64,000 bases of DNA from positions 1 to 64,000 of the IMG/VR virus record IMGVR_UViG_3300042516_005475; one strand, given 5' to 3'. The notes under the pieces are model-generated. The model made no database searches and was not told the DNA's origin. It saw only the letters and a list, made by a program, of their open reading frames with translations. Each line of letters opens with the position of its first letter. Within the stretch, counting starts at the first letter, position 1. Shown in pieces: positions 1 through 39,694 of the stretch. Both the position numbers and the translations under genes were made by a program.

Positions 1-1089
1 AGCAGCACCACGGCGGTGACGAACTGCAATTCTGTTTGCTTCAACGATCAACTTCTGATAGAAGTCGCGATTACGCTCAGCCAACCAGCGACCGTCAGCA
101 GCAGAAGCTGTCCAGCTTGTTACGGAACCGTAAGAAGCATACTTCAAGCAGACTTGGATCATTCTGATGACCATTTCACGATCGATTTCAGCCTGGAGCT
201 CATAGCTCATGGCGTTTGTCAATTCAGCATCGATATCGATACCGTTCATGTTCTTCAAGTCCTGCTCCAACTCAACAGACCAACGAGCAGCTAGTCTGCG
301 GGTACCAGCTTCAACGGCTGTCTTCTCGAAGGAGATAGAAGCTGTTGGGATCTGAGAAGTGAACTCGTAGTTGGCTAGCAACTGAGCAACACCTTGATCA
401 GAATCAATAATCTGGAAGTTGGTGTTGTTTTCATATGCTGCTAATTCAGCAGAAGAAGCACCAGTGAAACGGGTGTCTAGGTATTGGTAACCAAGTTCAC
501 CAGAATAGGTACCACCGAACGTACCAGTGTTACCTGGGCTCACTACACCAGCAGCAGCAGCCTGCCATGGGTAAGGTCCAGGGTTGCCGTAGGCAGCATC
601 ATTGTACTTGCCTGGGATCTGGCTACCTAGTACGTCATTGTCGTACTTGTAACGTAGAGCGAAGGCGAGACCAACTGGACCGCTCATTGGCTGAACACCA
701 ACGATTTCGTTAGTGATCAACTCAGGGAAGGTACGGCGGATCATTGGAATGAGGATCTTTGGCAAACGAGCATCACCGGTAGCATACCAGTCAGCATTCG
801 TATCGCCAGTAGAGTTGTTTACGGCTGCACCGTAACCACCCATACCACCTACTGCACCGTATGCGCCACCGAAAGCTGATTGAGTAGATCCAGAAACGTT
901 AGCGCCGGATTCTTCAATGCACCATCTCTCTTGGTTCTCAAGAAGAATGGCAGTGTTAAGACGTGTGTGATCGTCTTCGATGTTTCTCACGTTCTTGCTG
1001 TTAAAATCAAGAACAGGTGACCACTTCTCAAGAAGAGCGCCAGCTCTATCTGGAGAAATATATGACTGTGAAGGTCTGATATTTTTCAT
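1..1089 (-). CDS. gp23: Major capsid protein, T4 gp23-like (5' part; runs off the window start)
   Basis: Not in the ORF track because it is open at the edge. Manual translation from ATG 1089 gives MKNIRPSQSYISPDRAGALLEKWSPVLD...TAILLENQE...LIPMIRRTFPELITNEIVGVQPMSGPVGLAFALRY, which are gp23 motifs. It follows the scaffold gene. Confidence 0.95.
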   Translation of the reverse strand, partial: MKNIRPSQSYISPDRAGALLEKWSPVLDFNSKNVRNIEDDHTRLNTAILLENQERWCIEESGANVSGSTQSAFGGAYGAVGGMGGYGAAVNNSTGDTNADWYATGDARLPKILIPMIRRTFPELITNEIVGVQPMSGPVGLAFALRYKYDNDVLGSQIPGKYNDAAYGNPGPYPWQAAAAGVVSPGNTGTFGGTYSGELGYQYLDTRFTGASSAELAAYENNTNFQIIDSDQGVAQLLANYEFTSQIPTASISFEKTAVEAGTRRLAARWSVELEQDLKNMNGIDIDAELTNAMSYELQAEIDREMVIRMIQVCLKYASYGSVTSWTASAADGRWLAERNRDFYQKLIVEANRIAVRHRRGAA

Positions 1090-11908: not shown

Positions 11909-12268
11909 TTACTTTTCAAGATGCTCTGCGTACATTTTAATCTCTCGCTGAGATAATTCAAGATTGCGAGCAAGCATTTCCAGATTTTCATCCTCCTTAG
12001 TCTTTTCTTTCTTTACTTTTTTAATGTATTCGATTTTCTTATATCGCATGCGAGGAATTACATTAATAAGAAACTTATTTTGTTCATCCTTAGACAAACA
12101 CATCCAATAGCGATTAGATGTTTCGTTAACAATAGTAGCAACTTCACCACTATGCATACTCAACCACCTATTAACAAGGAAAAACTGATACTCCCGCTCT
12201 TCTTCAACAGAAATATCAGTCTTCTTTTTTAACGTGGTGATATTAGTAATAATATCAAAAATCGTCAT
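11909..12268 (-). CDS. gp62: Clamp loader small subunit, gp62-like
   Basis: YQFFLVNRWLSM...QNKFLINVIPR...YIKK...LSQREIKMY. Confidence 0.75.
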   Translation of the reverse strand: MTIFDIITNITTLKKKTDISVEEEREYQFFLVNRWLSMHSGEVATIVNETSNRYWMCLSKDEQNKFLINVIPRMRYKKIEYIKKVKKEKTKEDENLEMLARNLELSQREIKMYAEHLEK

Positions 12269-12849
12269 TAGATAACCTTACTAGTAGCAATAAAGATATC
12301 ATCAGTAATAGCATAAAAAATCTCAACAACCTTCTTCATAAACTCTTCAACTTGCTGATGAGTCATGTTAGTCGAGAATGCAAAAGCAGGAGCCTTCTTA
12401 CCAGCAGTAACGTTAATAGCGGTATGACCTAGAGCAGCACCATTAACCAAATGAGTAATACTCACACTAGCCTTACCCTTGGGTTGAATAATACCATGCT
12501 GGTTATGCTCAGCATGAACAATCAAATCATCCCCATCAACCTCAATAGGTTTATTGATAATGGAAGTAAGAATATTTGCAATCTGAGTATTAAAGAGACG
12601 CTGAAATGAAACAGCCGCGAAAGCATCAATATTAGGAATTTCCCAGCAAAAGTTAACTGCGTCATCACTGTAAATGTAGTCATTATTAAGAATATCTTCT
12701 GTATCAATCATACCCTCAGCTTCAACATGCATCGGTGCACGGAATGCAACAATGTTGCCGATAGGCAAGGTACGATCTCGAAAGAACTTATAGGCAAAGC
12801 GCTTATGAATGAGATTGCCATCGTAGATCGGAATATTATTCAATATCAT
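12268..12849 (-). CDS. DUF366-like protein (BPL/LplA ligase-like fold)
   Basis: YDG..., IVAFRAPMHV, D.ED, SDDAVNF, QRL, DGDDL, KASVSI, HTAINV match the archaeal DUF366 motif order as recalled. Confidence 0.7.
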   Translation of the reverse strand: MILNNIPIYDGNLIHKRFAYKFFRDRTLPIGNIVAFRAPMHVEAEGMIDTEDILNNDYIYSDDAVNFCWEIPNIDAFAAVSFQRLFNTQIANILTSIINKPIEVDGDDLIVHAEHNQHGIIQPKGKASVSITHLVNGAALGHTAINVTAGKKAPAFAFSTNMTHQQVEEFMKKVVEIFYAITDDIFIATSKVI

Positions 12850-14225
12850 GCGTTGATTCTAATATATTTTTCAGCGAGTTCAACTGAAACCTTTTCAAGT
12901 TTTAATTCTTCTAGCAGCTCTAATATTCCTACATTCCCACGCTTTGGATTTCTGCAGTCATAGAAATACAAATAATCGTCAATATAAACTTCATTCTCTG
13001 CAAATGAAGGTATAGCCAATGAATAGAATCTATCTTCTTGATCGTTCATCTCTGGAAAGAGAATATTCAGAGCAATAGATTTCTTAACAGGGGACAAATG
13101 GTTGGGGCAACGATAGTAGGTTACAGGTTGAGCTGATCCATCAATTGTACCCATTTTATGGCTCCAGTTCTTATGCTTCATTGTAATCTCAACACGTCTA
13201 GGAGTCTTACCATTGAAAGTAATAATACTGTTAAAACCAACAACATCAGGCTTGCTGTCAGTTGCTTTGAGAATTTTTTCGACATATTTTTCTGAAACCC
13301 AATCATCATCATCAATAAAAGCTATATACTCTCCTGATGCATTGTGAATTAAGTCGTTACGCTTCTTACCAATAGTTAGCTCTCTATTATCTTTTGCTAC
13401 AAGAATTTCTACTTCTGGGGTTAGTTGAGGTTTTAGTCTTGTTTTAAGGCGCTCAAGATAATTCTCTCTACCATTCACTGTGCAAATTAGCAAACTAAGT
13501 CTCTTGTAAGGCTTTGGAACAAATCTAGTATTCCATTTTTCTTTGAAGATAGCATGCTGAAAATCCATACTACATAAATTACGATCTTCTGCTTTAATAG
13601 TTCCATGAGACTTACTAAGCAAATGATGTATATGAGAGCTTGTACACAAGCCATGCTTCACATTGTAAGAGTTATACATCTCGACCCAGTCATTGTCTTG
13701 ATAATAAAAGGCAAAGCGTTCATCAAAACCACCTAAAATATTAAATAACTTTCTACGAATAATAAAACTCCAACCAGTAAACTCGTAAGAGGTTCTTGTT
13801 CCAATGTGAAGTTCTTTTAATGAGCTAAAGATAGACTCGGTATGTCTGTGCCACTTACGATCAATTGGGCTAACAGACATTAACTCAGGATCAATTTCAA
13901 ATTGTTTTGCAATAGCAGTAAACCAACCCTTGTAATAAATAACATCATTATTTGTAATTAGCACCAAATCGTTTTTACATTCTCTCAAACCAATGTTTAA
14001 GTATAGATTGTAATTAAATTTAGGTACTTGTGGGATAAGAAACTTTGCTCTTATTTCAGAAAGCTTGTGAGTAAACAAAGAAGAAACTTCTTTGCAAGAT
14101 TCAACAACAATTACGTTAAATTTATGCTCTGGTTCTGAATCATGAATAGAATCAACAGTTTGTTTAAGAATATCAAACAACTCGTTAGTAGTTGTGTTGC
14201 TAAGAATAATTACATCGACGTCCAT
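12846..14225 (-). CDS. Two-domain GT2 glycosyltransferase
   Basis: Domain 1: NNDV, GGFDERF...QDND. Domain 2: TIGKKRN, GEYIAFIDDDD, QED. Confidence 0.85.
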   Translation of the reverse strand: MDVDVIILSNTTTNELFDILKQTVDSIHDSEPEHKFNVIVVESCKEVSSLFTHKLSEIRAKFLIPQVPKFNYNLYLNIGLRECKNDLVLITNNDVIYYKGWFTAIAKQFEIDPELMSVSPIDRKWHRHTESIFSSLKELHIGTRTSYEFTGWSFIIRRKLFNILGGFDERFAFYYQDNDWVEMYNSYNVKHGLCTSSHIHHLLSKSHGTIKAEDRNLCSMDFQHAIFKEKWNTRFVPKPYKRLSLLICTVNGRENYLERLKTRLKPQLTPEVEILVAKDNRELTIGKKRNDLIHNASGEYIAFIDDDDWVSEKYVEKILKATDSKPDVVGFNSIITFNGKTPRRVEITMKHKNWSHKMGTIDGSAQPVTYYRCPNHLSPVKKSIALNILFPEMNDQEDRFYSLAIPSFAENEVYIDDYLYFYDCRNPKRGNVGILELLEELKLEKVSVELAEKYIRINA

Positions 14226-15028
14226 AGAGTTTTAGTCTTAATAGCCTTTAATCTTTGCAGAACAATGTCCTGCTTAGTATCAGAAATAGATACAGGAGAG
14301 TCTTTATATATCAAGCTGAAATAATTGGCTCCATCTTGAATATTCTTTTTCCAATCTGATCTTGGTCGAATAGTAGAATCGTTTTCTGAGCAAGCCAATT
14401 CTTCGAGAAAATCACTTGAATTAACAATATCAGGCCACCACCAATAGGCTGGTAGATACCCGTTTAGAACAGCTCTATAACTGTGTTCTACATGTTCCCA
14501 AGCATTAACAAAAGTCTCATCAAACAAACCAATTCTCATTAGGAGATCCCTGCTATAGTAACAGAAGCCACCTACGCAATTAGGGTTGAATGCTAGTTTA
14601 GTTTTACTATATTCAACTACACAGCGAGGGTCTGGCTTTTTATCTTTCTTATTAGCTGGACCGTGATATCCAAACATTAGGTGTTTAATGCCAGAATCTT
14701 TACTCGCCTTAATATATTCATCAAAGACGTTAGAGTCTTTAATAAAAATATCATCTTCAAGCAAAAAGATATCAGTGCAATCTTGGTTAAGCAAATGAAG
14801 CATAGCTTTATTTTTGCTACGACCTACACCAATATTCTTTTCATTCTTTAAGTATGTTAAATTCAGAGTATCTACTATTGATGGTAAAGGCTCATTACCA
14901 TCGTCTACAAGAACAACCTCATCAAGCCTATTAAAAGGTATTGTTTTAAGAACCTGTTTAAGGAATACAGGTCGATTGCAGGTAATAATACCCAGTCCGA
15001 TTTTTTGTTTTGTTTTAGTTTCTATCAT
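14210..15028 (-). CDS. GT2 glycosyltransferase
   Basis: IITCNRP, VLVDDG, NIGVGRSKN, FLLEDD, IGLFDE; start trimmed to MIETKTK. Confidence 0.85.
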   Translation of the reverse strand: MIETKTKQKIGLGIITCNRPVFLKQVLKTIPFNRLDEVVLVDDGNEPLPSIVDTLNLTYLKNEKNIGVGRSKNKAMLHLLNQDCTDIFLLEDDIFIKDSNVFDEYIKASKDSGIKHLMFGYHGPANKKDKKPDPRCVVEYSKTKLAFNPNCVGGFCYYSRDLLMRIGLFDETFVNAWEHVEHSYRAVLNGYLPAYWWWPDIVNSSDFLEELACSENDSTIRPRSDWKKNIQDGANYFSLIYKDSPVSISDTKQDIVLQRLKAIKTKTLWTSM

Positions 15029-15719
15029 CTTGACAAGTCCATATTTGGAGGTTAAACCGATTATTTTCCCAAGGCATAGCTGGATCACAGATTACTTCTG
15101 AGCAAGCATGCGGTAATCTAGATGGAAAAATACATAAGAAATTATTTTTAAGAGGGTATTCATAACATTTACCCTCATGCATAAACAGCTGGCTACCACC
15201 CTTAAGTAGAGATTCATCTTTGACAAGAGTATACGACATGGTAAAGACAGGTGTCATAGCTACTTCTTTACCTTTAATTGAAAGACCGTAAATTCCATCA
15301 TCAGAATGCCAATTATAATAATCACCATTACCGTAGCTAATAATATGAGTTCTTCCATTAAGACCATATCGAGAACCCAATTGAAACTCTCTACTCTTGC
15401 ATTGACCCATAAACTTGAGTATGCCTTGATGAAAGAAAAACTTATCAAGGTTGTTTAATGCATAGCCAGCTGGAATGTTATGATCAGGAAGCCAAACATC
15501 ACTACCCCAACAAAGATGGTTTAAATTATTCTTAGTTGTTTCAAAATCAGTAGAAGTATCTTGCTGTCTTGTTGCACCATCTCCAAATTTCCAAACAGGG
15601 GTACCAAAATACTGTTTGATATCAGTCATTTCTTTATAGATAGTATCAACAACAGCTCTTGGAAGAAAGTTTTCAGCCCATATAATAGGTGGGTCAGTTT
15701 CCTCATGTAGTAAGAACAT
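15015..15719 (-). CDS. 2OG-Fe(II) oxygenase (prolyl-hydroxylase-like)
   Basis: YNWHSD (HxD), GGSQL, IFPSRLPHAC, NRF; start trimmed to MFLLHEE. Confidence 0.8.
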   Translation of the reverse strand: MFLLHEETDPPIIWAENFLPRAVVDTIYKEMTDIKQYFGTPVWKFGDGATRQQDTSTDFETTKNNLNHLCWGSDVWLPDHNIPAGYALNNLDKFFFHQGILKFMGQCKSREFQLGSRYGLNGRTHIISYGNGDYYNWHSDDGIYGLSIKGKEVAMTPVFTMSYTLVKDESLLKGGSQLFMHEGKCYEYPLKNNFLCIFPSRLPHACSEVICDPAMPWENNRFNLQIWTCQDDRN

Positions 15720-15780
15720 ACATTTTATTTTAAAGTAAAAATTTGGATTTTCAACTAAATATACATATATATCTTTGATT

Positions 15781-16467
15781 ATGTCATCCAAAACTCCAAA
15801 GACATTTAATGTAGCAGAGAAGTTTGAGCTTTCTGAAAATCACAAACGGATTGTAGATGCTATATTAGATAGAGACAATAAGCTTATCTTTATTGATGGA
15901 CCAGCAGGTTCAGCCAAGACATACTGTGCTGTATTAGCAGCCTTAAAACTTGTTCAAAGAAAGAGCTTCAAGAGCATTCTTTATTTGAGAAGCATTGCTG
16001 AATGTTCTAGTCAAAAACTAGGTTCATTACCTGGAGAGTTGCATGAGAAGATTGGTCCGTTTGGAGCCCCATTTTTGGAAAAGCTTAGCGAAATGATTTC
16101 AGAGGCTGCAATTACTAAGTTAGCATCTGAAAGCGCTTTAGATATTCAGCCTCTTAACTTCTTGAGAGGTACTACATTCCATGATAAGATTGTATTGCTA
16201 GATGAGGCTCAAAATGCTGAACTCGATCAGCTCATCATTGTTCTAACCCGTCTTGGAGAACACGGAAAGCTTGTTGTTATCGGAGATAGTAACCAAGTAG
16301 ATATTAGAGATAAGAAGAGCTACGGAAATGTTGTAGCTAAGTTTAATAGTGAGGAATGTAAGAGTGTTGGCATTCAATCCTTCACTCTCACAGAAGATGA
16401 TATTAAAAGAAGTAAGATCTTAAAGTTTATTGTTGGTAAGCTTAATGAACTTAAGTCTAACCGTTGA
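15781..16467 (+). CDS. phoH: PhoH-family ATPase
   Basis: GPAGSAKT, LGSLPGEL, FLRGTTF, LDEAQN, TRLGE, GDSNQVD. Confidence 0.9.
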   Translation: MSSKTPKTFNVAEKFELSENHKRIVDAILDRDNKLIFIDGPAGSAKTYCAVLAALKLVQRKSFKSILYLRSIAECSSQKLGSLPGELHEKIGPFGAPFLEKLSEMISEAAITKLASESALDIQPLNFLRGTTFHDKIVLLDEAQNAELDQLIIVLTRLGEHGKLVVIGDSNQVDIRDKKSYGNVVAKFNSEECKSVGIQSFTLTEDDIKRSKILKFIVGKLNELKSNR

Positions 16468-16937: not shown

Positions 16938-17516
16938 TTAGTTTATTTTTTTTAAAAACGTATATAAACTCTCCCAATTATAAACTCTATCCCCTGTCCA
17001 GTTTTTATTGTATGGGTGATCCATAATTATACTTCGCAACCCAACTTGTTTACCGCTTTCTGCATGAGAAACACTATCCTCTAACCAAAAATAATTTTTA
17101 TCCTTGTACTGAACTTTAAGAAAATCTAATTTACTTTTTTTAAAATCTAAACTACAATTAATATAGTCAAACACATCTCCAAATAGGTGTTTTAAATTGT
17201 TTACTCTTAACCTTTGAGCGTATTTGTCAATATGTAAACAACTGATAACTTCAAACCTCCAACCATCTTCTGCTAATTTTTTTACAAATTCTTGAGCATC
17301 TCGGAAAGGCGGAAGAAAACCAACTGCTCCACTTTCATTAAACCTTGATATACAATCTAAGGCTACCTCTTCAGGTAGCCCATATCTAGCACCTTGATAA
17401 AAAATGTGGTCGGTGTTAGGTAATCTTTCATAGCCTCGCTCACTCATCCATACATCGAAAGCAAAAGACCAGTCAAGTAAAACACCGTCACAATCAGTGA
17501 TTAATTTCTTATGCAT
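16938..17516 (-). CDS. HAD-family 5'(3')-deoxyribonucleotidase-like phosphatase
   Basis: TDCDGVL (DxDG), WLEDS, HPYN. Confidence 0.8.
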   Translation of the reverse strand: MHKKLITDCDGVLLDWSFAFDVWMSERGYERLPNTDHIFYQGARYGLPEEVALDCISRFNESGAVGFLPPFRDAQEFVKKLAEDGWRFEVISCLHIDKYAQRLRVNNLKHLFGDVFDYINCSLDFKKSKLDFLKVQYKDKNYFWLEDSVSHAESGKQVGLRSIIMDHPYNKNWTGDRVYNWESLYTFLKKIN

Positions 17517-18234
17517 TTTTTATATACTTGTTTAATTCTTGCCAAGTACCTAAATCAATATAATCCTCTACTTCGATCCCCTTACTTAAATACAAAGGGG
17601 TACTTTTTATCTCGTTTAAAAGTACCCGCTGCTTCAAGGTACTTTTTTCCATAAATGTTATGCTTTGATCGAATGCTCTTTTTCTAAACGCAAAACTACA
17701 CCAAAAAGCATTAAATCTCTCTAATTTTTCTTGCGGCTTATCTTCATATAGTTCTATTATATTGTTTTCATTAATATAAAGGGAACCTTTTGTTTTAAGC
17801 ATAGCAGGGTTCTGTTCTCTTTTATAAAAAAAAGAGAATCCGGTTTCTGTAAGACTATTTTCTACAGATGTAAATAAATCCACCCCTAAACCTAGTTTCA
17901 TTAATGTGTCGGGTAGTAATATAACATTGTGTTCTCCAAACAAATGTTTTGCGCTTTTTATAGCACCTGTATATTCTTGCTCATTAGGGTTTTGAAAAGT
18001 AAAACTAATATCAAACCTATCTTTATACTTGGAAAGATAATTTACAACATCTAGTTTATTTTCGTTTATAACTATAACAAACTCTACATCTTTTCTACCG
18101 TAATCTCTAAAAAAATTAAACGAAAAATCAATTAGAGAAGAATCTTCATCGACTCTAAGGATTTCTTTTGAATATGGTAATTTTAACCTACTACCCTTAC
18201 CAGCTGCAGGTATAATTACAGTTAGTTTGCTCAT
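17509..18234 (-). CDS. Sugar-phosphate nucleotidyltransferase (NTP_transferase)
   Basis: IIPAAGKGSRL...SKE, LLPD, YEDKP, YIDLGTW. Confidence 0.85.
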   Translation of the reverse strand: MSKLTVIIPAAGKGSRLKLPYSKEILRVDEDSSLIDFSFNFFRDYGRKDVEFVIVINENKLDVVNYLSKYKDRFDISFTFQNPNEQEYTGAIKSAKHLFGEHNVILLPDTLMKLGLGVDLFTSVENSLTETGFSFFYKREQNPAMLKTKGSLYINENNIIELYEDKPQEKLERFNAFWCSFAFRKRAFDQSITFMEKSTLKQRVLLNEIKSTPLYLSKGIEVEDYIDLGTWQELNKYIKNA

Positions 18235-19660: not shown

Positions 19661-20392
19661 TTAAACCTTGAGAGCTTTATTCCACAAGACCAATTGCAAT
19701 CGAGGACTAAAGTTAAAACCATGCTTCTTGCAAACCTCTGCTACCCAAGGAGCAACAGCATTATGCTCATCTCGAGAACCACAGCAAGGCATCAACCAAA
19801 TTTGATCTTCAGTAATACTAAAAGGTTTGATATACTTTTCGATAATCTCTTCAACATCACTATCTTTCTGCACAACAAACTTAAAGTAAGAGTAGATACT
19901 AGCGTGGTAAGCAATAACCTCTGGAACGTATCTCTTCTCTTCTGGATCTCCGTTAGTAGACAACTTAGGAGACACAGTAAAAGTAGCATTTATACTTTCC
20001 CAAAAACTTGAAGGATTAATCGTACAGTTAGTTTCAAAATCAATAACAGGATAGAAATCGAACTTTCTGAAAAAGGCTTCAATAAACTCAATCAAAGCCT
20101 TTTGCTGAATAAGAGGTTCACCACCAGTAATCTTAAGAACATGATTGCCTTTCAACTTATTTAGGTAATCATTATCTTCAAAGATCTTAAAGATCTCTTC
20201 AAAGGTTAGCTTATTCTTCTTAGACCAGCTAACATAGCTATCACAACCAAACGGAGAATCAGGAGACTTAAACCCGATGCAAGTCAAGTTGCACATTGCC
20301 AATCGCATGAAGATGCTTGGCTTACCAACCAAATGACCTTCACCTTCGATAGTTTCAAAGACAAAGTCATCAGAGAGAAATAATGAACTCAT
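19661..20392 (-). CDS. queE: 7-carboxy-7-deazaguanine synthase (radical SAM)
   Basis: FETIEGEG, FMRLAMCNLTC...CDS, ITGGEP, ETN, TVSPK, SPRLQ. Confidence 0.9.
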   Translation of the reverse strand: MSSLFLSDDFVFETIEGEGHLVGKPSIFMRLAMCNLTCIGFKSPDSPFGCDSYVSWSKKNKLTFEEIFKIFEDNDYLNKLKGNHVLKITGGEPLIQQKALIEFIEAFFRKFDFYPVIDFETNCTINPSSFWESINATFTVSPKLSTNGDPEEKRYVPEVIAYHASIYSYFKFVVQKDSDVEEIIEKYIKPFSITEDQIWLMPCCGSRDEHNAVAPWVAEVCKKHGFNFSPRLQLVLWNKALKV

Positions 20393-20422
20393 AATTTAAT
20401 GATATAGGAATCACTCTTAAGT

Positions 20423-21118
20423 TCAAGCCCATTTAGTACCAAAGTCCCAGGTACTAGGACGATTCTTACCACCGACTGGAACCCCTTGCGGAGGAGCATC
20501 AGTCTGCTTAGGGGTAACCCTAACTGGTTTATTTGTGTCATAAGCCAAGGCTTCAGTCTGCTTTTCAGACTTAGCAGGCGGAGCCCAGACAGGTTCAGCA
20601 GTCTTACCCTTCTTGCCTTTGCCTTTAGCAGGCGCAGCCTCAGCTTCATCAGCAACTTCTGCTGTAGATTCTTGAGCAGTTTCAGCAGAATAAATAGCAG
20701 AGTTCTTCTCATGCTCAAACACCTCAACAGAATGAGCTCGAACTCGACCGCTAGTCTTATGCTTCACGTAGCTATCTGCAGCATTAAAGCAATACTTTGC
20801 AAACAACTCAATTCCAACCCCTTCATCCATAACAACGATTGAGGCAGCTCCAGCCTTTTCAAGAGCCTCAAACTCTTTCATAGCAGGGTCATTCTTAGCA
20901 AGAACGAGAGTATGATCAAACTTCTCCTGCAAGAATCCCTTCAATTCGTCAAAGTCTCCGAAGTCAACAACCCAATTGTTGCCGTCAAGAGAATCAGAAG
21001 TAAACGTAAATTTACCAACCAATCGATAACCATGAATGAATCTGCAATGGGACTTTGCATTAGGCTGACGAAATGCAGCACTTCCGAGTTCAATAACCTT
21101 CGTGGAATAATATCTCAT
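20423..21118 (-). CDS. queD: 6-carboxy-tetrahydropterin synthase with a low-complexity C-terminal extension
   Basis: SHCRFIHGY, WVVDFG, FDHT, EHEKNSA; start trimmed to MRYYSTK. Confidence 0.85.
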   Translation of the reverse strand: MRYYSTKVIELGSAAFRQPNAKSHCRFIHGYRLVGKFTFTSDSLDGNNWVVDFGDFDELKGFLQEKFDHTLVLAKNDPAMKEFEALEKAGAASIVVMDEGVGIELFAKYCFNAADSYVKHKTSGRVRAHSVEVFEHEKNSAIYSAETAQESTAEVADEAEAAPAKGKGKKGKTAEPVWAPPAKSEKQTEALAYDTNKPVRVTPKQTDAPPQGVPVGGKNRPSTWDFGTKWA

Positions 21119-21157
21119 ACTCAGATATGTTATGAACATTTTTCCTAGAATCAAGCC

Positions 21158-21185
21158 TTGACTTGAACGAATTTGTCTCTATAAT
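21158..21185 (+). promoter_or_regulatory. Sigma70-type promoter of folE
   Basis: TTGACT-N16-TATAAT, with ATG 6 nt downstream. Confidence 0.7.
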
Positions 21186-21191
21186 AGGCGT

Positions 21192-21848
21192 ATGAATGAT
21201 GAGATTAGAGAGAAAGATTACCTCCTCCCGACTGCTAACAGTTCTATGGCTTTGACAGAAGAGCAAAAGCTTGCTATTATCGACAAGGGTGCTAAGGCAT
21301 ATGAGACTTTTTTGGATGCTCTTCGCATTGACTGGCGTAATGATCCGAATAGCGCAGGTACTCCTCGACGTGTTGCAAAGTCGTACGTGTTTGATTTAAT
21401 CTCTGGGTGCTATGAGGCTCCGCCGAAGATTACTTCTTTTCCTGCTGATGGTTATGATGGCATCGTCTCTCAGACGAATATTCCGTTGACTAGTATGTGT
21501 AGCCATCACCATTTGGCCTTTACTGGATTGGTGCATGTTGCTTATATTCCTAGTCTTGAAGGTCGTGTTATTGGCTTGAGTAAGCTCAATCGTATTGTTG
21601 AGTTTTATGGTCGTCGACCTCAGATTCAAGAAGGTTTGACGATGCAGATTCATAAGGCTATTAACGAGGTCTGCGAGCATAACAAGGGTGTTGCAGTTGT
21701 TGTTAAGGCTCAGCATACTTGTGCTTGTAATCGAGGTGTGAGACATCAAGGTTGTTATATGGTTACATCTAAGCTGTCTGGAGACTTCTATGATGACGAG
21801 AAGACTCGCAAGGAGTTTTACGACTTTATTAAAATGGCTGAAGAGTAG
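21192..21848 (+). CDS. folE: GTP cyclohydrolase I
   Basis: TPRRVAK, SMCSHH, GLSKLNRIV, RPQIQE, HTCACNRGV. Confidence 0.95.
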   Translation: MNDEIREKDYLLPTANSSMALTEEQKLAIIDKGAKAYETFLDALRIDWRNDPNSAGTPRRVAKSYVFDLISGCYEAPPKITSFPADGYDGIVSQTNIPLTSMCSHHHLAFTGLVHVAYIPSLEGRVIGLSKLNRIVEFYGRRPQIQEGLTMQIHKAINEVCEHNKGVAVVVKAQHTCACNRGVRHQGCYMVTSKLSGDFYDDEKTRKEFYDFIKMAEE

Positions 21849-21880: not shown

Positions 21881-22417
21881 ATGTCAGGCGCATTTGAACA
21901 TAAAATTTTAACTGTTAGTCAGTCAAAGCAAGCCGGTCTTCTTGGCCCAGCGAAAATCGCTGCTAGTAAACCCGATACAGGTGTTACTATAGTCAAGAAG
22001 TCGGCTTATTTTGTTATTAGGGATTGTGCAAAAATTACTGAAAAGTATCTCGTACACCATGTTTGGGGTGAAATTAAAAACCCCATTGATAGGCTCGAAG
22101 GAGCATTTACCAGAGCTGAAATTGAAGATTTCTTATCTAGAGCCAAAAGAGATACTGAAACACAGCAATTGTGTTCTGTAATTCTAGAAGACATTCATAA
22201 GAAGAATAAGCTTGAAAATACAGGCATTGTATCTCCTGTAGCTGATGCTCCGGTAGTTAAATTTGACTTTACCGAATTTGAGAATGATAAGATTTATGGT
22301 GATTATGATACTGGCGCTCCACAAGCAGACGTTGTAGAAATTCCAACTGGGGTGTTACCAGAAAAAGAAAAGTCAACTTATGAGCTATTTCTTGAAGCCT
22401 TTAAACCTAAGTTATAA
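21881..22417 (+). CDS. Hypothetical late protein upstream of the tubulin gene
   Basis: ORF preceded by TAAATA. Confidence 0.6.
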   Translation: MSGAFEHKILTVSQSKQAGLLGPAKIAASKPDTGVTIVKKSAYFVIRDCAKITEKYLVHHVWGEIKNPIDRLEGAFTRAEIEDFLSRAKRDTETQQLCSVILEDIHKKNKLENTGIVSPVADAPVVKFDFTEFENDKIYGDYDTGAPQADVVEIPTGVLPEKEKSTYELFLEAFKPKL

Positions 22418-22425
22418 ATAAAATT

Positions 22426-23532
22426 ATGAGTGATGATACATCTTTCGATATGGAGTTGCCAGACATTCCAATGCCTGGTCAAGAAATTAATACCGACATT
22501 GAAGACAAGATACAAGTAGGGTTTAAGTTTAGCTTTGTTGGAGCTGGTCAAGGTGGTTCAAGAATCGCTGAAACCTTTCACAAGCTTGGCTACAAGAGAA
22601 CCTGTGTGCTTAATACCGCTCAGCAAGACTTGGCAACAATTGAAGTTCCAAACAAGCTTAAGATTGGTACTGATTCTGGAGCAGGTAAGAATAGAGAAGT
22701 TGCTAAACAGGCTTTAATTGAACAGAGAGAAGATGTTCTTGATCTATTCAGAAAGTCTTTTGCTGGTAACTTTGATCGTATTTTTGTTTGCGCTGGTGCT
22801 GGTGGTGGTACTGGTTCTGGAACAACAACTGAGCTAATTAAGATTGCTAAAGACTACCAAGATTCAATTAAATCTACTTCTGAAAAGGTTGGTGTATTTT
22901 TAGCCTTGCCAAAGAACACTGAAGGTAAGAAGTGTGCTGAGAACGCTCTTAAGACTTTAACTGAGGTTCTTGAGCTCGTAGATCAAGGAATTGTTTCTCC
23001 ATTGGTTATTATTGATAATGAGAAGATTAATACAATCTATCCAAGATTGTCTATTAATCAGTTCTGGAATACTTCTAACAACAGCATCTGTTCTCTATTC
23101 AATCTATTCAATAACATTATTACAAAGAACAGTAGCTATACTTCTTTTGATAATAAGGATTATAAGACAGTGCTTGATAGTGGTATTATTGTATTCGGTG
23201 CAACCCAAGTTACTCAATGGTCTGACGGTACTGAGATTTCTAAAGCTATGAGAGATAACCTCAAGAAGAATATCTTGTCTGGTGGCATTGATCTCGGTAC
23301 TGGTAACATTGCTGCTGCAGTTGTTGTTGGAGATTCAAATGCTCTTGACAATATTCCACAAGAGTATCTTGATCAGGCTTTTGAGCAGCTTACCCGTACA
23401 TTGAAAAACAACTCAACTGTACACCAAGGTATCTATAAAGGTAACAAGGCTGGCTTGAGTATCTTTACTGCAATCGGTGGTTTAGGTAAACCAACCGCTA
23501 AAATAGAAGAGCTTAAGAAGTTATCTACTTAG
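22426..23532 (+). CDS. Tubulin/FtsZ-superfamily GTPase (TubZ/PhuZ/CetZ-like)
   Basis: VGAGQGGSRI (T1), GAGKN (T3), GAGGGTGSG signature, IIDNEK, FDNKD (T7-like). Confidence 0.9.
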   Translation: MSDDTSFDMELPDIPMPGQEINTDIEDKIQVGFKFSFVGAGQGGSRIAETFHKLGYKRTCVLNTAQQDLATIEVPNKLKIGTDSGAGKNREVAKQALIEQREDVLDLFRKSFAGNFDRIFVCAGAGGGTGSGTTTELIKIAKDYQDSIKSTSEKVGVFLALPKNTEGKKCAENALKTLTEVLELVDQGIVSPLVIIDNEKINTIYPRLSINQFWNTSNNSICSLFNLFNNIITKNSSYTSFDNKDYKTVLDSGIIVFGATQVTQWSDGTEISKAMRDNLKKNILSGGIDLGTGNIAAAVVVGDSNALDNIPQEYLDQAFEQLTRTLKNNSTVHQGIYKGNKAGLSIFTAIGGLGKPTAKIEELKKLST

Positions 23533-24151
23533 CCTTGTTGAGGATGTCGAATAAAGTTTTGGCATCCTCTTCACTTGTACCAGGTGGCAATGCAGCTTTA
23601 AAAGCATAATAATCACCAGCTTTAGCAAGGGCTCTTACTTTAGAGCCCTTTACTGTTTTTACATCATTAGGATCTATTTTACCCGACATTGCTCTTTCAC
23701 CACCTAGAGAAACAACACCAACCTTAGTTCCATCTCTCATTGGAGTCTTAAATGTTTCTTCGTTATCAGCTTTACGATCACTACCGCTAATTATGCTTAC
23801 AATAGGGTATTTTAAAACGTTGTGTAAGTAACCTGCAGCATGTTGAGGGGTAGTAATTCTATCATTTTCAACAACGTTAATATCTGCGTAGTTTGGATTG
23901 GTTTTAAATACAGATAGCCTTGCTTTGTATGGAACAGGGTTCTTATCTCCCTTTTCACTTGGAGATAAGAATACATAGAAGTCTGCGTTATTTTTATCTG
24001 CGTATTCTTTAGCGAGTTTAATTAGGTAGTCATGACCAGCTGTTGGAGGATGCATTCTTCCAAATATAAAGTATGCAGCATCTTTCTTCTGCTTAGAGTT
24101 TAAGTCTGCATGAGTTACAACTGCCTCGTATATCTCATTAAAGGTTTTCAT
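23525..24151 (-). CDS. Cytidylyltransferase-like (HxGH-type) nucleotidyltransferase
   Basis: FIFGRMHPPTAGH, KNP, GSDR, GSKVRA; family familiar from T4-like phages. Confidence 0.75.
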   Translation of the reverse strand: MKTFNEIYEAVVTHADLNSKQKKDAAYFIFGRMHPPTAGHDYLIKLAKEYADKNNADFYVFLSPSEKGDKNPVPYKARLSVFKTNPNYADINVVENDRITTPQHAAGYLHNVLKYPIVSIISGSDRKADNEETFKTPMRDGTKVGVVSLGGERAMSGKIDPNDVKTVKGSKVRALAKAGDYYAFKAALPPGTSEEDAKTLFDILNKAK

Positions 24152-37594: not shown

Positions 37595-37600
37595 GTGTGT

Positions 37601-38311
37601 ATGAGTAAGTGTGTAATTCCTGTTAGTGGTGGCATTGATTCAACGGTCATGCTTTATGATGCTGCTGCATCTAAGACCTATTCAGATATCTTCGCGATTA
37701 GTTTTTATTACGGTCAGCGTCATGCTACGAATGAGCTGGCTTGTGCAACTAAATCTGTTAATACTTTAAAGGAAAAGTACCCAGAGATTAATATCTATCA
37801 CCGAAACATTGATCTAAGCTTCTTTGGTGAGATTGCTATTAGCTCTTCAATTACCAATAATGATATTGCTGTTGCTCAGACTAAAGATGTTCTTGGTGAT
37901 CCACAGCCGGTTAATTATGTACCGTTTCGTAATCTAATGATGCTTTCTATTCTCTGCTCTTTTGCAGAGGCTCATGGTGCTCGAGATGTTTACTATGGTA
38001 GTGCTCTTGTTGATTCTCAGGCTGGGTATTGGGACTCTAGTAATGAATTCTACTTGAATCTCGCTTCTGTTATTGGTCTCAATCGTAAGAATAAGATTTC
38101 TATTATTACACCGTTGATTAAGCTTGATAAGAAAGATATTATCAAGTTAGGTGATGAGCGTGGGGTTGACTTTAAGAGTACCTGGACTTGTTATGAAGGT
38201 AAAGAACAAGCCTGTGGATATTGTCCAGCCTGCTCTAGTCGAATCAAAGGCTTTATGGATTATATGATGGTTGACCCTATTGAATACAGCCGAAAGATTA
38301 AATTTATCTAA
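37601..38311 (+). CDS. queC: 7-cyano-7-deazaguanine synthase
   Basis: SGGIDS, YGQRH, YVPFRN, TWTCY...CGYCPAC. Confidence 0.95.
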   Translation: MSKCVIPVSGGIDSTVMLYDAAASKTYSDIFAISFYYGQRHATNELACATKSVNTLKEKYPEINIYHRNIDLSFFGEIAISSSITNNDIAVAQTKDVLGDPQPVNYVPFRNLMMLSILCSFAEAHGARDVYYGSALVDSQAGYWDSSNEFYLNLASVIGLNRKNKISIITPLIKLDKKDIIKLGDERGVDFKSTWTCYEGKEQACGYCPACSSRIKGFMDYMMVDPIEYSRKIKFI

Positions 38312-38312
38312 T

Positions 38313-38963
38313 ATGTGTGCAATATTTGGTTCTGCTTCTAAAGAAAAATTTGTTAAACTATACGAGTTAAATAAACCTAGAGGTGTATCTGCTTCCAGTT
38401 ATTTAACTATAACTGATAATGGTTGGATTGATTGTTACAAGAGCGCTGGTGCATTTGATGAAAATAGATTAAAATCTAGTAAGTTATATCTTGGTCATTG
38501 CCAGGCTCCAACCACAGTTAATCAGAGCTTTAACCCTGAACTAGCTCACCCATTTTATTGGAATCGCTTTTATGTCGCTCACAATGGTATTATTACCAAT
38601 GTAGAAGAGCTTTGTGAAAAGTACTTTATTAAGCTTGAAGATATTAAAGTTGACTCTAGTATCATACCTGCTTTGATAGGTTACTTCTATCATAAAAAGA
38701 ACTCTGACCAACTTCAAGACATTATTAAGCGTGTTGCTGAGTTGCTCAAAGGTACTTTTGCTTGTTATATTGTAGATGAAAGATCTAATCGAATATTTCT
38801 TATTCGATCAGGTTCTACCTTGTTCTATGATCAAGATAGCAATATCTCCTCTACTAAGTTTGATAATGCTATTCCTTTTGAAGAAGGTAGGGTAGGTGAA
38901 ATTGTTAAAAACAAGATTATATATCACAATACCTTTATTTGTAACTCCCCATTTTTTATATGA
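38313..38963 (+). CDS. Class II (Ntn) glutamine amidotransferase
   Basis: M-C-AIFG start (Cys1 nucleophile), GHCQAPT, AHPF, HNGII, VDS. Confidence 0.8.
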   Translation: MCAIFGSASKEKFVKLYELNKPRGVSASSYLTITDNGWIDCYKSAGAFDENRLKSSKLYLGHCQAPTTVNQSFNPELAHPFYWNRFYVAHNGIITNVEELCEKYFIKLEDIKVDSSIIPALIGYFYHKKNSDQLQDIIKRVAELLKGTFACYIVDERSNRIFLIRSGSTLFYDQDSNISSTKFDNAIPFEEGRVGEIVKNKIIYHNTFICNSPFFI

Positions 38964-39694
38964 AAATTTTATTTTATACTTGTACTAAACAGAACGTAGA
39001 TGCATTTCTTAAGTTCTCTCCATTAATTAAATGTCTTGGTCTTGGCAACGATTTGCCTTACAAGCCTAAGAAAGCCTCTCTTAATGAACCTCTCGAACTC
39101 AATTACAAGTTTAAGAATCTTCGTTATGGTGCTGATCTGATTGTTTGGACTGAAAATACTGATAGTCTCAGTGTTCAGTATAACAAGGCTAAGAAGTATT
39201 ATGATCAATACGATGCTATTATATTCTTGCACGATGATGTGTTTATTACTGATGCCTTCTTAATTGAGAAGCTCCAGGTAGCCTTTGCACAATTTGACGT
39301 TGTTGGATTGGCAGGTGGAGCTGATATTAGTCTTAAGAGCTATGGCTTGTGGCATATGATGTGTGATCCAAAGACCTTTAGTGGTGCAGTTTCACATTTT
39401 GATAATTCTGGAAAAGAGTTTGTTACAGCCTTTGGACCGTTTGGCAAGCGTTGTTTGCTTTTAGATGGTTTGTTCTTGGCTGTAAACACTAAGACAGCTA
39501 AGGCTGTTAATTGGGACGAAAATGTAAAGTTCCACCATTACGACTTGCTATTCTGCTTGGAAGCTAATAAACTCAAGCTGAAGCTAGGTACTGCTCCTAT
39601 TTACGTGACTCATGAATCTCCTGGATTAAAAGGATTTAGTGAGGAATTTAAGAAGAGTGATGCTTACTTCAAAGAATACTTTAACAAATACTAA
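38960..39694 (+). CDS. GT-A-fold glycosyltransferase-like protein
   Basis: SLSVQYN, FLHDDV, VVGLAG, LDGLFLA, WDE..FHHYD, HESPG. Confidence 0.75.
   Translation: MKILFYTCTKQNVDAFLKFSPLIKCLGLGNDLPYKPKKASLNEPLELNYKFKNLRYGADLIVWTENTDSLSVQYNKAKKYYDQYDAIIFLHDDVFITDAFLIEKLQVAFAQFDVVGLAGGADISLKSYGLWHMMCDPKTFSGAVSHFDNSGKEFVTAFGPFGKRCLLLDGLFLAVNTKTAKAVNWDENVKFHHYDLLFCLEANKLKLKLGTAPIYVTHESPGLKGFSEEFKKSDAYFKEYFNKY

What the first reader, a model, noticed from the sequence alone, without database searches (positions are those of the whole stretch)
19661..21848. queE-queD / folE divergent cluster: preQ0 pathway with no DpdA or TGT visible
FolE, QueD and QueE here, plus QueC at 37601, make the complete established route from GTP to preQ0. 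In phages this normally feeds a DpdA transglycosylase that inserts 7-deazaguanines into DNA to block restriction. No DpdA/TGT, QueF or ArcS is recognisable in this 64 kb. Either the inserting enzyme lies outside the window or a different insertion route is used; the nearby kinase and HAD phosphatase would fit a nucleotide-level route (speculative).
Basis: partly seen in the sequence, partly recalled or inferred. Interest (0 to 1): 0.6.

Follow-up and report, generated by a model that had tools for sequence, protein, structure and literature searches.

The report
Split 7-deazaguanine DNA modification system
The preQ0 genes are real, and the "missing" inserting enzyme is a DpdA3-type transglycosylase about 3.9 kb before the window start on this circular phage genome, so this is a known kind of anti-restriction DNA modification system; a nucleoside-kinase-like gene that always travels with DpdA3 is not explained in the DpdA3 papers I could read.

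Summary
FolE (21192-21848, +), QueD (20423-21118/21154, -), QueE (19661-20392, -) and QueC (37601-38311, +) are present, and no TGT, DpdA, QueF or ArcS lies in the 64 kb.

The window is the first 64 kb of a circular 230 kb T4-like jumbo phage contig. The two contig ends overlap inside the capsid gene gp23. About 3.9 kb upstream of window base 1 lies a four-gene cassette:
- dpdA3 (226049-226882)
- dpdN-like formyltransferase (226886-227815)
- AAA_28 kinase (227825-228511)
- queF (228515-229405)

[quoted passage not shown] In that phage all G is replaced by 7-formamidomethyl-7-deazaguanine (fdPreQ1).

The DpdA3 model (pLDDT 91) superposes on TGT, ArcTGT and DpdA at Z 17-18.

This is a new member of a known kind.

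One question remains open. DpdA3 is always next to a nucleoside/dNMP-kinase-like gene, in this lineage, in immuto, in Campylobacter CP220 and in phiST. DpdA3's substrate has never been shown, so insertion at the nucleoside or nucleotide level is not excluded; I put it at about 0.3.

The parts
21192..21848 (+). folE, GTP cyclohydrolase I. First step: GTP to dihydroneopterin triphosphate.
   Evidence: Pfam PF01227 E 7e-48; TIGR00063 E 2.5e-48; phrog_2197 E 3e-61. 58% identical to FolE of phage immuto_2-6A.
20423..21154 (-). queD, 6-carboxytetrahydropterin synthase of the phage type. Likely start is the ATG at 21118. It carries an Ala/Pro/Lys-rich C-terminal tail of about 85 aa that ends in a conserved GTxW motif.
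   Evidence: PF01242 E 8e-16; phrog_2389 E 3e-37. The alignment with QueD of immuto, phiST, phiSM and MA9V-3 shows a shared FRQ..HCxFxHGY motif, and the tail is shared with related contigs.
19661..20392 (-). queE, radical-SAM 7-carboxy-7-deazaguanine synthase.
   Evidence: phrog_2076 E 4e-44; QueE TIGRFAMs E 4.5e-15 and weaker, all below their cut-offs. tblastn: 35% to Chryseobacterium phage MA9V-3 QueE (E 1e-39) and 36% to Cellulophaga phiSM QueE (E 4e-32). Cys triad aligned with other phage QueE.
18243..18959 (-). Kin1, a P-loop kinase of the AAA_28 / NadR-ribosylnicotinamide-kinase / dNK type. It is a paralogue of the kinase next to dpdA3. Substrate unknown.
   Evidence: PF13521 E 1e-12; dNK E 2e-4; phrog_2107 E 6e-15. 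31% identical to the immuto kinase (E 1e-13). Lies within about 1.2 kb downstream of queE in 4 of 4 related genomes, directly after it in 2.
37601..38311 (+). queC, 7-cyano-7-deazaguanine (preQ0) synthase. An alternative GTG start is at 37595.
   Evidence: TIGR00364 at 154.8 bits (cut-off 150.3); phrog_1550 E 4e-57. SGGIDS motif and Cys cluster present. UvsX-QueC gene order is conserved in 4 of 4 relatives.
38313..38963 (+). Stand-alone class-II (Ntn) glutamine amidotransferase. It starts with Met-Cys 1 nt after the queC stop codon. Proposed role: supplying ammonia to QueC.
   Evidence: GATase_6 E 2e-8; glmS/purF N-terminal domains E 1e-10 to 1e-8. The N-terminal MCAIFG is visible. Homologues lie beside queC in KVP40-like vibriophages and in 2 of 4 relatives.
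21881..22417 (+). orf178, unknown function. It is linked to the system: next to folE here, and about 3.7 kb downstream of queF in 10-11 related contigs.
   Evidence: No Pfam, NCBIfam or PHROG hit. Atlas search empty. Neighbourhood counts.
1..1089 (-). N-terminal 363 codons of gp23, the major capsid protein. The rest of the gene is at the far end of the contig. This marks the circular junction that places the dpdA3-dpdN-kinase-queF cassette (genome 226049-229405) just upstream of the window.
   Evidence: The joined ORF is 87% identical to Gp23 of a related contig, apart from a duplicated 48-aa stretch at the junction, which is a 144-nt end overlap.

Best explanation
The queE-queD/folE cluster and queC form the precursor-supply part of a DpdA3-type 7-deazaguanine DNA hypermodification system. 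The system is split over three places on a circular, roughly 230 kb T4-like phage genome.

Predicted pathway:
- FolE, QueD, QueE and QueC convert GTP to preQ0. The adjacent glutamine amidotransferase probably supplies ammonia to QueC.
- The bimodular QueF (228515-229405) reduces preQ0 to preQ1 with NADPH.
- The DpdA3 transglycosylase (226049-226882) exchanges guanine for the deazaguanine.
- The DpdN-like formyltransferase (226886-227815) formylates the aminomethyl group.

Shown here: gene presence, homology, fold, conserved catalytic motifs and synteny. Inferred: every enzymatic step, the identity of the final base, the degree of replacement, and whether DpdA3 acts on DNA after replication, as the literature proposes.
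For: Precursor genes:
- The four preQ0 genes are verified.

DpdA3 (P0001, 277 aa):
- 46.6% identical over its full length (blastp E 3e-73) to the annotated DNA guanine transglycosylase of immuto_2-6A.
- About 45% identical to CP220 gp056.
- blastp E 3e-7 to phiST CGPG_00065, the founding DpdA3.
- phrog_19058 E 2e-60.
- AlphaFold2 model with pLDDT 90.9. All top-50 Foldseek hits are TGT, best E 3e-9.
- VIA-align Z 17.2-17.9, rmsd 3.1-3.3 A over 232-239 residues, to ArcTGT 1iq8, bacterial TGT and the DNA preQ0 insertase DpdA 7ui4.
- D57-x3-F61, D88 and D211 are invariant in 45 homologues. Their spacing matches the three invariant Asp and the stacking Phe of bDpdA/TGT (PMC10164549).

Rest of the cassette:
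- DpdN-like N-terminal domain is 45% identical (E 1e-52) to immuto DpdN YP_010114479. The N-x-H and D-D-G motifs are present.
- QueF is 47% identical to immuto QueF, and has both the ESKSIKLY NADPH motif and the Cys-x-V-T-x-QPDW motif.
- Gene order dpdA3-dpdN-kinase-queF is identical to immuto.

Genome context and experimental precedent:
- The circular junction is shown by the split gp23.
- Immuto DNA carries 345,000 fdPreQ1 per 10^6 nt and no dG (PMC10516641).
Against: - Nothing here is experimental. The phage is a metagenomic contig, so the DNA base is only predicted.
- DpdA3 has never been shown to be active in vitro or in E. coli; attempts were unsuccessful (PMC10516641).
- It gets no hit from Pfam TGT, from a profile search of PDB sequences, or from hhalign against single DpdA1/DpdA4 sequences.
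- It lacks the Zn-binding Cys/His cluster of TGT and DpdA: there is no Cys after residue 192.
- The formyltransferase is 309 aa rather than 175 aa, because of a C-terminal DUF1599/Nmad1-like domain. The paper set 'longer forms' aside as probably doing other reactions.
- The amidotransferase next to queC could divert preQ0 to G+.
- A conserved kinase, which has no role in the published pathway, sits inside the cassette.
Confidence: 0.8

Rival explanations
1. Insertion at the nucleoside or nucleotide level, which is the reader's speculative route in modified form. DpdA3 would swap guanine for the deazaguanine on deoxyguanosine or dGMP rather than on DNA. The co-inherited dNK/NadR-RNK-like kinases would phosphorylate the product, and the phage family-B polymerase would incorporate the modified dNTP. 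This follows the logic of T4: dCTPase, then dCMP hydroxymethylase, then dNMP kinase.
For: - A P-loop nucleoside/NMP-kinase-like gene lies within two genes of dpdA3 in every lineage examined:
  - 79 of 80 IMG/VR loci of this T4-like clade.
  - immuto.
  - CP220 gp057.
  - phiST gene 66 and MA9V-3, which carry a different kinase family, AAA_18/AAA_33.
- Among 50,697 phage records, Kin2 homologues occur only in 17 Campylobacter and 4 immuto records. That is essentially the same set as the DpdA3 homologues.
- The Kin2 profile best matches the ribosylnicotinamide (nucleoside) kinase domain of NadR, E 2e-5, including the DDGxR motif. Its model's top structural matches are deoxyadenosine kinase, thymidylate kinase and NadR, with dCK and Dm-dNK further down, all at TM about 0.5-0.6.
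- The three experimentally characterised DpdA3 phages also have a nucleotide hydrolase within 1-3 genes of dpdA3:
  - PRA-PH/MazG-like in immuto.
  - HD domain fused to a P-loop kinase in CP220.
  - MazG in phiST.
- Relatives carry a GMP reductase inside the cassette (7 of 80).
- An XGPRT-like phosphoribosyltransferase is conserved near the cassette.
- DpdA3 is a minimal barrel without the Zn subdomain.
- From my own knowledge of T4, SPO1, PBS1 and S-2L: the known complete base replacements are made at the nucleotide level. DpdA1, DpdA2 and DpdA4, proposed to act after replication, reach at most about 30%.
- ADG nucleoside was seen in CP220-infected cells, as cited in PMC10516641.
Against: - No TGT-family enzyme is known to act on a mononucleotide.
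- bDpdA acts on DNA (PMC10164549).
- The authors who defined DpdA3 propose insertion after replication.
- This genome has no detectable dGTP-removing enzyme. MazG, HD, Nudix, dUTPase_2 and GMP reductase are all absent, and only an ordinary trimeric dUTPase is present.
- The kinase and the PRTase can equally be read as salvage of guanine released by a DNA-level exchange: G to GMP to GTP and back to FolE.
- The 80 loci are one lineage, so there are only about 3-4 independent observations of the linkage.
Confidence: 0.3
2. The final base is dPreQ1, or another preQ1 derivative, rather than fdPreQ1. The 309-aa formyltransferase-Nmad1 fusion would do something else.
For: - 57 of 80 related loci have dpdA3-kinase-queF without any DpdN, so the core cassette works without formylation.
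- The protein here is a 'longer form' of the formylase, a class that the paper thought might have other roles.
- DpdN activity itself is only predicted.
Against: - The N-terminal domain is 45% identical to immuto DpdN over that protein's whole length, and sits in the same position between dpdA3 and the kinase.
- The extra length is a separate small protein in relatives (22 of 23 DpdN loci have it). It is not an Fmt- or ArnA-type C-terminal domain.
Confidence: 0.15
3. The product is archaeosine-type dG+. QueC and the adjacent amidotransferase would act together like the Gat-QueC fusion of phage 9g.
For: - A class-II amidotransferase with the catalytic N-terminal Cys is translationally adjacent to queC.
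- In 9g, Gat-QueC plus DpdA gives dG+ (PMC6884629).
Against: - The two proteins are separate and in the opposite order to the fusion.
- A true QueF with the NADPH motif, and a DpdN, are present.
- Homologous amidotransferases lie next to queC in vibriophages phi-Grn1 and phi-ST2. Their DNA contains dPreQ1 and mdPreQ1 and no dG+ (Table 1 of PMC10516641).
- The amidotransferase is missing in 2 of 4 relatives.
Confidence: 0.07
4. The pathway makes preQ0 or preQ1 for tRNA queuosine, via the host TGT, rather than for DNA.
For: The genes are the tRNA-Q precursor pathway. No canonical TGT or DpdA is encoded.
Against: - A DpdA3 homologue, a DpdN homologue and full synteny with a phage whose DNA is 100% modified.
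- queC is embedded in the replication module: polB, UvsX, DnaB and gp32.
Confidence: 0.03

Closest known systems
[quoted passage not shown] 2023, PMC10516641)
   Same: - Same gene set: FolE, QueD, QueE, QueC, QueF, DpdA3 and DpdN, plus an AAA_28 kinase and a purine-type phosphoribosyltransferase.
- Same order: dpdA3-dpdN-kinase-queF.
- Identities of 22-58%: DpdA3 47%, DpdN 45%, QueF 47%, FolE 58%.
   Different: - The host phage is a 230 kb T4-like myovirus from metagenomes, not an Immutovirus.
- The genes are split over three loci 14-24 kb apart rather than lying in one block of about 7 kb.
- DpdN is fused to a DUF1599/Nmad1-like domain.
- A glutamine amidotransferase follows queC.
- There is a second kinase paralogue next to queE.
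- No PRA-PH/MazG-like hydrolase is found next to dpdA3.
dADG system of Campylobacter Firehammervirus CP220 and dDG system of Cellulophaga phage phiST (DpdA3 systems with complete G replacement)
   Same: - DpdA3 homologue: 45% identical to CP220 gp056, and E 3e-7 to phiST CGPG_00065.
- FolE, QueD and QueE are shared.
- A small P-loop kinase is adjacent to dpdA3.
   Different: - Those phages stop at CDG-derived bases: they have no QueF, and phiST has no QueC.
- They carry an HD or MazG hydrolase beside dpdA3, which was not found here.
DpdA1/DpdA2 systems (phage 9g, CAjan, phiSM, nt-1) and the bacterial DpdA/DpdB system
   Same: - Same precursor pathway.
- Same TGT fold, and the three catalytic Asp, in the inserting enzyme.
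   Different: - Those enzymes are found by Pfam TGT or phrog_887, and are proposed to modify 0.1-30% of G after replication. For bDpdA a specific target guanine was identified.
- bDpdA needs the ParB-like ATPase DpdB.
- No such protein is detected here. The partner gene here is a nucleoside-kinase-like protein instead.
T4 hydroxymethylcytosine pathway (gp56 dCTPase, gp42 dCMP hydroxymethylase, gp1 dNMP kinase). This is an analogy from my own knowledge, not homology.
   Same: A modifying enzyme sits next to a dNMP/nucleoside-type kinase in a T4-like phage with predicted complete replacement of a base. Other DpdA3 phages also have a (d)NTP hydrolase there.
   Different: There is no homology between the enzymes. 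No dGTPase was found in this genome. Nucleotide-level action of DpdA3 is hypothetical.

Membership tests
DpdA3 subfamily of DNA transglycosylases | Sequence homology to the founding members: phiST CGPG_00065, Campylobacter phage homologues and immuto KNV73_gp206. | tested here: met
   blastp/tblastn: 46.6% to immuto (E 3e-73), 45% to CP220 (E 5e-54), E 3e-7 over the full length to phiST, E 2e-14 to MA9V-3. phrog_19058 E 2e-60.
DpdA3 subfamily of DNA transglycosylases | TGT-like (beta/alpha)8 fold. | tested here: met
   AF2 pLDDT 90.9. Foldseek top 50 hits are all TGT (best E 3e-9). VIA-align Z 17-18, including DpdA 7ui4.
DpdA3 subfamily of DNA transglycosylases | The three active-site Asp (general acid/base, base-binding, nucleophile) that are invariant in TGT and DpdA. 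| tested here: inconclusive
   D57 (with F61), D88 and D211 are invariant in 45 homologues, and sit in motifs resembling those of TGT and bDpdA. The assignment rests on motif and spacing, plus two short hhalign pieces. No residue-level structural superposition was available.
DpdA3 subfamily of DNA transglycosylases | Co-occurrence with 7-deazaguanine synthesis genes in the same genome. | tested here: met
DpdA3 subfamily of DNA transglycosylases | Exchange of guanine in DNA for a 7-deazaguanine, with complete replacement. | not testable with these tools
   This needs biochemistry or LC-MS. It has not been shown for any DpdA3 (PMC10516641).
Canonical TGT / DpdA1 / DpdA2 / DpdA4 | A match to Pfam PF01702 or to the phage DpdA families, and the Zn-binding Cys/His cluster. 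| tested here: not met
   - No PF01702 or phrog_887 match in the genome.
- No blastp hit with phiSM DpdA or HVTV-1 DpdA4.
- No Cys after residue 192 of P0001.
DpdN (preQ1/dPreQ1 formyltransferase) | Homology to YP_010114479, with the PurN-type catalytic Asn/His/Asp, and encoded beside dpdA3 and queF. | tested here: met
   45% identity, E 1e-52, covering all 175 aa of immuto DpdN. Formyl_trans_N E 2e-13. N101-G-H103 and D-D-G are present. Same position in the cassette.
DpdN (preQ1/dPreQ1 formyltransferase) | Short single-domain architecture of about 175-190 aa. | tested here: not met
   The protein is 309 aa. Residues of about 195-309 are a DUF1599/Nmad1-like domain, which is a separate ORF in relatives.
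preQ0 pathway (FolE, QueD, QueE, QueC) | All four enzymes present with their signature motifs. | tested here: met
   Only QueC passes its NCBIfam equivalog cut-off. The others pass Pfam or PHROG thresholds and group with phage versions from experimentally modified phages.
QueF (NADPH-dependent nitrile reductase, bimodular) | QueF_N plus QueF domains, the E(S/L)K(S/A)hK(L/Y)(Y/F/W) motif and the catalytic Cys. | tested here: met
   PF14819 E 1.5e-32; PF14489 E 6e-22; TIGR03138 E 2e-74. ESKSIKLY at residue 82. C194 lies in the motif C-K-V-T-S-QPDW. The gene is outside the window, at 228515-229405.
Gat-QueC (G+ synthase of phage 9g) | A class-II amidotransferase domain fused N-terminally to QueC. 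| tested here: not met
   The two are separate genes in the order queC then gat. The amidotransferase does have the N-terminal Met-Cys nucleophile.

The most novel reading that the evidence does not exclude
DpdA3 systems, including this one, may not modify finished DNA. The minimal, Zn-less TGT-fold enzyme would exchange the base on deoxyguanosine or dGMP. The co-inherited dNK/NadR-RNK-like kinases (Kin2 next to dpdA3, Kin1 next to queE) would then feed the modified nucleotide to the polymerase. That would make this the first pre-replicative 7-deazaguanine pathway and the first TGT-family enzyme acting on a mononucleotide.

The evidence here is a strict phyletic and positional link between DpdA3 and these kinases. 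The DpdA3 paper does not mention this link.
Probability: 0.3. Interest if true: 0.8.

Novelty: new member of a known kind. Interest (0 to 1): 0.35.

Why it matters
For the scan, the apparent anomaly of a preQ0 pathway with no inserting enzyme is an effect of where the window was cut. The enzyme is encoded about 3.9 kb before the window start and belongs to a subfamily that standard TGT models miss.

Biologically, this places the DpdA3/fdPreQ1-type system in a large, environmentally abundant clade of T4-like jumbo phages.

The core cassette in that clade is dpdA3-kinase-queF. DpdN plus an Nmad1-like protein is an optional add-on.

The constant kinase partner bears on how complete guanine replacement is achieved. 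It is a concrete, testable lead in cultivable relatives such as immuto, CP220 and phiST.

Tried and rejected
Searches that found nothing or were too weak to use:
- Pfam TGT and phrog_887 on the whole genome gave nothing. The phrog_887 control rang nowhere, so that result is weak.
- DNA similarity of 19-24 kb to known phages: none.
- BLASTP with DpdA of phiSM, DpdA4 of HVTV-1 and several CP220/MA9V-3 neighbours: nothing. My first guess for the CP220 DpdA3, gp021, was wrong; it is gp056.
- Profile of DpdA3 homologues against PDB sequences: no real hit.
- hhalign of that profile against single DpdA1/DpdA4 sequences: probability about 1%, with only short motif-level pieces.
- Complex prediction for DpdA3 with Kin2 gave no verdict, so it is evidence neither for nor against binding.
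- A dGTP-removing enzyme in this genome: MazG, HD, Nudix, dUTPase_2 and GMP reductase families are all absent, and only a trimeric dUTPase is present at 70329-70697.
- BLASTP with the immuto PRA-PH, phiST MazG and CP220 HD proteins found nothing in this genome or in the 80 related loci.
- The idea that the DUF1599/Nmad1-like domain is a MazG-like pyrophosphatase got no support from hhalign or from PDB sequences. The domain also travels with DpdN rather than with DpdA3.
- Atlas search for orf178 was empty.

Ideas rejected:
- I considered Kin2 as a DpdB-like motor ATPase. Its fold is that of small-molecule nucleoside/NMP kinases, so this is unlikely.
- The HAD protein and the nucleotidyltransferase as part of the system: they are not conserved beside the que genes in relatives.

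Steps that failed for other reasons:
- A literature search for DUF366 matched only DUF3669 papers.
- The supplementary tables of PMC10516641 are not held.


Full report
**What the window is.** The window is bases 1-64000 of a single 230,047-bp IMG/VR virus contig with 36% GC, estimated 100% complete by CheckV. Related contigs carry T4-type Gp23, Portal_T4, gp13 and the S77 prohead protease. The window itself holds a family-B polymerase, UvsX/RecA, a DnaB-like helicase and gp32. It is therefore a T4-like jumbo myovirus.

The contig is a circle cut inside the major capsid gene. Window bases 1-1089 (minus strand) encode the N-terminal 363 codons of gp23, and the last 582 bases of the contig encode the rest. 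The joined protein is 87% identical to Gp23 of a relative, apart from a duplicated 48-aa stretch exactly at the junction. That duplication is a 144-nt assembly overlap.

**The observation.**
- FolE, 21192-21848 (+): PF01227 E 7e-48.
- QueD, 20423-21154 (-), likely start 21118: PTPS E 8e-16, phrog_2389 E 3e-37.
- QueE, 19661-20392 (-): phrog_2076 E 4e-44.
- QueC, 37601-38311 (+): TIGR00364 at 154.8 bits, above its cut-off.

QueD has the FRQ..HCxFxHGY variant motif. The QueD proteins of phiST, phiSM, immuto and MA9V-3 share it, and three of those phages have experimentally modified DNA. The QueE Cys triad aligns with other phage QueE proteins.

The window contains no TGT, DpdA, QueF or ArcS core.

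**The missing enzyme.** The key paper on phage 7-deazaguanines (Hutinet et al. 2023, PMC10516641) defines DpdA3. [quoted passage not shown]

I fetched phiST CGPG_00065 and compared it with all ORFs of the genome. One ORF matched over its full length: 226049-226882 (+), 277 aa, stored as P0001. The match was E 3e-7 to phiST and E 2e-14 to the Chryseobacterium phage MA9V-3 homologue.

Against the phage collection, P0001 is 45.5% identical by tblastn (46.6% by blastp) to the annotated 'DNA guanine transglycosylase' of the immuto phages, and about 45% identical to an unannotated gene of 14 of the 15 Campylobacter phage records that matched.

An HMM of 45 homologues finds no second copy in any frame of the genome.

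The AlphaFold2 model has pLDDT 90.9 and is a (beta/alpha)8 barrel. All top-50 Foldseek matches in the PDB are tRNA-guanine transglycosylases. VIA-align gives Z 17.2-17.9, rmsd 3.1-3.3 A over 232-239 residues, to archaeosine TGT, bacterial TGT and the DNA preQ0 insertase DpdA 7ui4.

D57 (followed by F61), D88 and D211 are invariant in the family. By motif and spacing they correspond to the acid/base Asp, the base-binding Asp and the nucleophile Asp that are invariant in TGT and bDpdA. The Zn-binding cluster is absent, because there is no Cys after residue 192.

**The cassette.** Three genes follow dpdA3 directly.
- A 309-aa formyltransferase at 226886-227815. Residues 2-179 are 45% identical (E 1e-52) to immuto DpdN.
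- An AAA_28 P-loop kinase at 227825-228511, called Kin2 here.
- A bimodular QueF at 228515-229405, 47% identical to immuto QueF, with the NADPH motif and the catalytic Cys.

Immuto has the same order, dpdA3-dpdN-kinase-queF. Its DNA contains 345,000 fdPreQ1 per 10^6 nt and no dG.

An XGPRT-like phosphoribosyltransferase lies 4.2 kb upstream of dpdA3, at 221404-221853. It also has an immuto homologue.

Because the genome is circular, the cassette ends about 0.5 kb before window base 1. dpdA3 is therefore about 24 kb from queE, with the capsid and portal block in between.

**Conclusion on the finding.** The system is a new member of the known DpdA3/fdPreQ1 kind. The predicted product is fdPreQ1 replacing most or all G.

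**Details that differ from the model system.**
1. The extra 115 aa of the formyltransferase are a DUF1599 'nucleotide modification associated domain 1'-like module (10 of 18 family members hit PF07659, best E 0.0023). In relatives it is a separate ORF, found in 22 of 23 DpdN-containing loci and in none of the loci without DpdN.
2. A class-II glutamine amidotransferase with the Met-Cys N-terminus starts 1 nt after the queC stop codon.
   - Homologues sit beside queC in KVP40-like vibriophages. Of these, phi-Grn1 and phi-ST2 carry dPreQ1 and mdPreQ1 and no dG+.
   - The gene is absent in 2 of 4 relatives.
   - I therefore read it as an ammonia supplier for QueC rather than as a G+ synthase.
3. 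A glycosyltransferase (38960-39694) overlaps the amidotransferase stop codon by 4 nt, and is conserved there in at least one relative.

**The kinase question.** In 79 of 80 IMG/VR loci with a DpdA3 homologue, the gene is followed by Kin2 and then QueF. The single exception is truncated. DpdN is present in only 23 of the 80. All 80 loci sit between the baseplate hub and gp23, so they count as one lineage.

The same kinase family flanks dpdA3 in immuto and in CP220 (gp057, 33% identical to Kin2). Among 50,697 phage records it occurs only in Campylobacter (17 records) and immuto (4 records) phages, which is the same set that has this DpdA3.

phiST and MA9V-3 have a different small P-loop kinase (AAA_18/AAA_33) next to dpdA3.

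The Kin2 profile best matches the nucleoside-kinase (RNK) domain of NadR, E 2e-5. Its model's top structural matches are deoxyadenosine kinase, thymidylate kinase and NadR, with dCK and Dm-dNK further down.

It lies within about 1.2 kb downstream of queE in 4 of 4 related genomes, and directly after it in 2 of them. The HAD-like protein and the nucleotidyltransferase do not.

The three characterised DpdA3 phages also carry a nucleotide hydrolase within 1-3 genes of dpdA3:
- PRA-PH/MazG-like in immuto.
- HD domain fused to a P-loop kinase in CP220.
- MazG in phiST.

Some relatives of this phage carry a GMP reductase inside the cassette.

The DpdA3 paper mentions no kinase and no phosphoribosyltransferase. 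No paper in the library other than the one defining DpdA3 uses that name for this protein.

**How to read the kinase.** I see two readings.
- Salvage. Guanine released by a DNA-level exchange is recycled by the PRTase and the kinase to GTP, which is the substrate of FolE.
- A nucleoside- or nucleotide-level route. DpdA3 exchanges the base on dG or dGMP, and the kinases feed the polymerase, following the logic of T4 gp56/gp42/gp1.

Against the second reading:
- This genome has no detectable dGTP-removing enzyme.
- No TGT-family enzyme is known to use mononucleotides.
- bDpdA acts on DNA.

I give the second reading about 0.3.

**Limits.** Everything here is inference from sequence. The DNA base, the extent of replacement and the substrate of DpdA3 were not and could not be measured. 

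Noticed in passing
window 22426-23532 (+): A tubulin/FtsZ-like protein with a TubZ-like C-terminal domain lies two genes after folE, in a T4-like phage. Scores: Tubulin E 2e-17, TubZ-like_C E 6e-6, FtsZ TIGR00065 E 1e-22.
   Followed up: no
window 20423-20680 (-), C-terminal about 85 aa of QueD: QueD carries a low-complexity Ala/Pro/Lys-rich tail ending in a conserved G-T-x-W motif. Related jumbo-phage contigs share it; immuto, phiST and phiSM QueD do not. It may be a docking peptide. The overlapping 112-aa ORF at 20389-20727 in another frame is probably not a gene.
   Followed up: partly
window 38960-39694 (+): A Glyco_tranf_2_5 glycosyltransferase overlaps the amidotransferase stop codon by 4 nt, giving a queC-gat-GT operon. 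It is conserved after the amidotransferase in relative G002. Its function, and any link to the base modification, are unknown.
   Followed up: partly
window 12268-15088 (-) and 16938-18234 (-): A group of sugar-nucleotide and glycosylation-type genes: a DUF366 protein (E 2e-23), two family-2 glycosyltransferases, a HAD-like protein and a sugar-1-phosphate nucleotidylyltransferase-like protein. One GT2 stays near Kin1/QueE in relatives; the HAD protein and the nucleotidyltransferase do not.
   Followed up: partly
window 15775-16467 (+): A PhoH-like ATPase (E 4e-47). In four related genomes it sits between queD and queE. CP220 also has a PhoH-like gene a few kb from dpdA3.
   Followed up: no
genome 226886-227815 (L006:11887-12816), residues about 195-309: A DUF1599/'nucleotide modification associated domain 1'-like module is fused to the DpdN-like formyltransferase. 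In relatives it is a separate protein of about 115 aa, present in 22 of 23 DpdN loci and in no locus lacking DpdN. Function unknown.
   Followed up: partly
L011:11375-12340 and L064/L065/L068/L071/L076/L077/L089: A GMP reductase (NF003966 at 331 bits) is inserted between dpdN and the kinase in 7 of 80 related cassettes.
   Followed up: partly
genome 221404-222364 (L006:6405-7365): An XGPRT-like purine phosphoribosyltransferase (NF006613 E 5e-20) and a dCMP deaminase lie 4 kb upstream of dpdA3. The PRTase has a homologue near folE in phage immuto.
   Followed up: partly
window 23525-24151 (-): A cytidylyltransferase-like protein (phrog_3041 E 2e-24; weak NMN-adenylyltransferase PHROG hit). Together with the NadR-RNK-like Kin1 it could instead form a split NadR-type NAD salvage pair.
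   Followed up: no
contig ends: genome 229904-230047 and window 1-144: There is a 144-nt near-identical terminal overlap with one amino-acid difference (His versus Asn in gp23). This indicates a circular or circularly permuted assembly with strain variation.
   Followed up: yes
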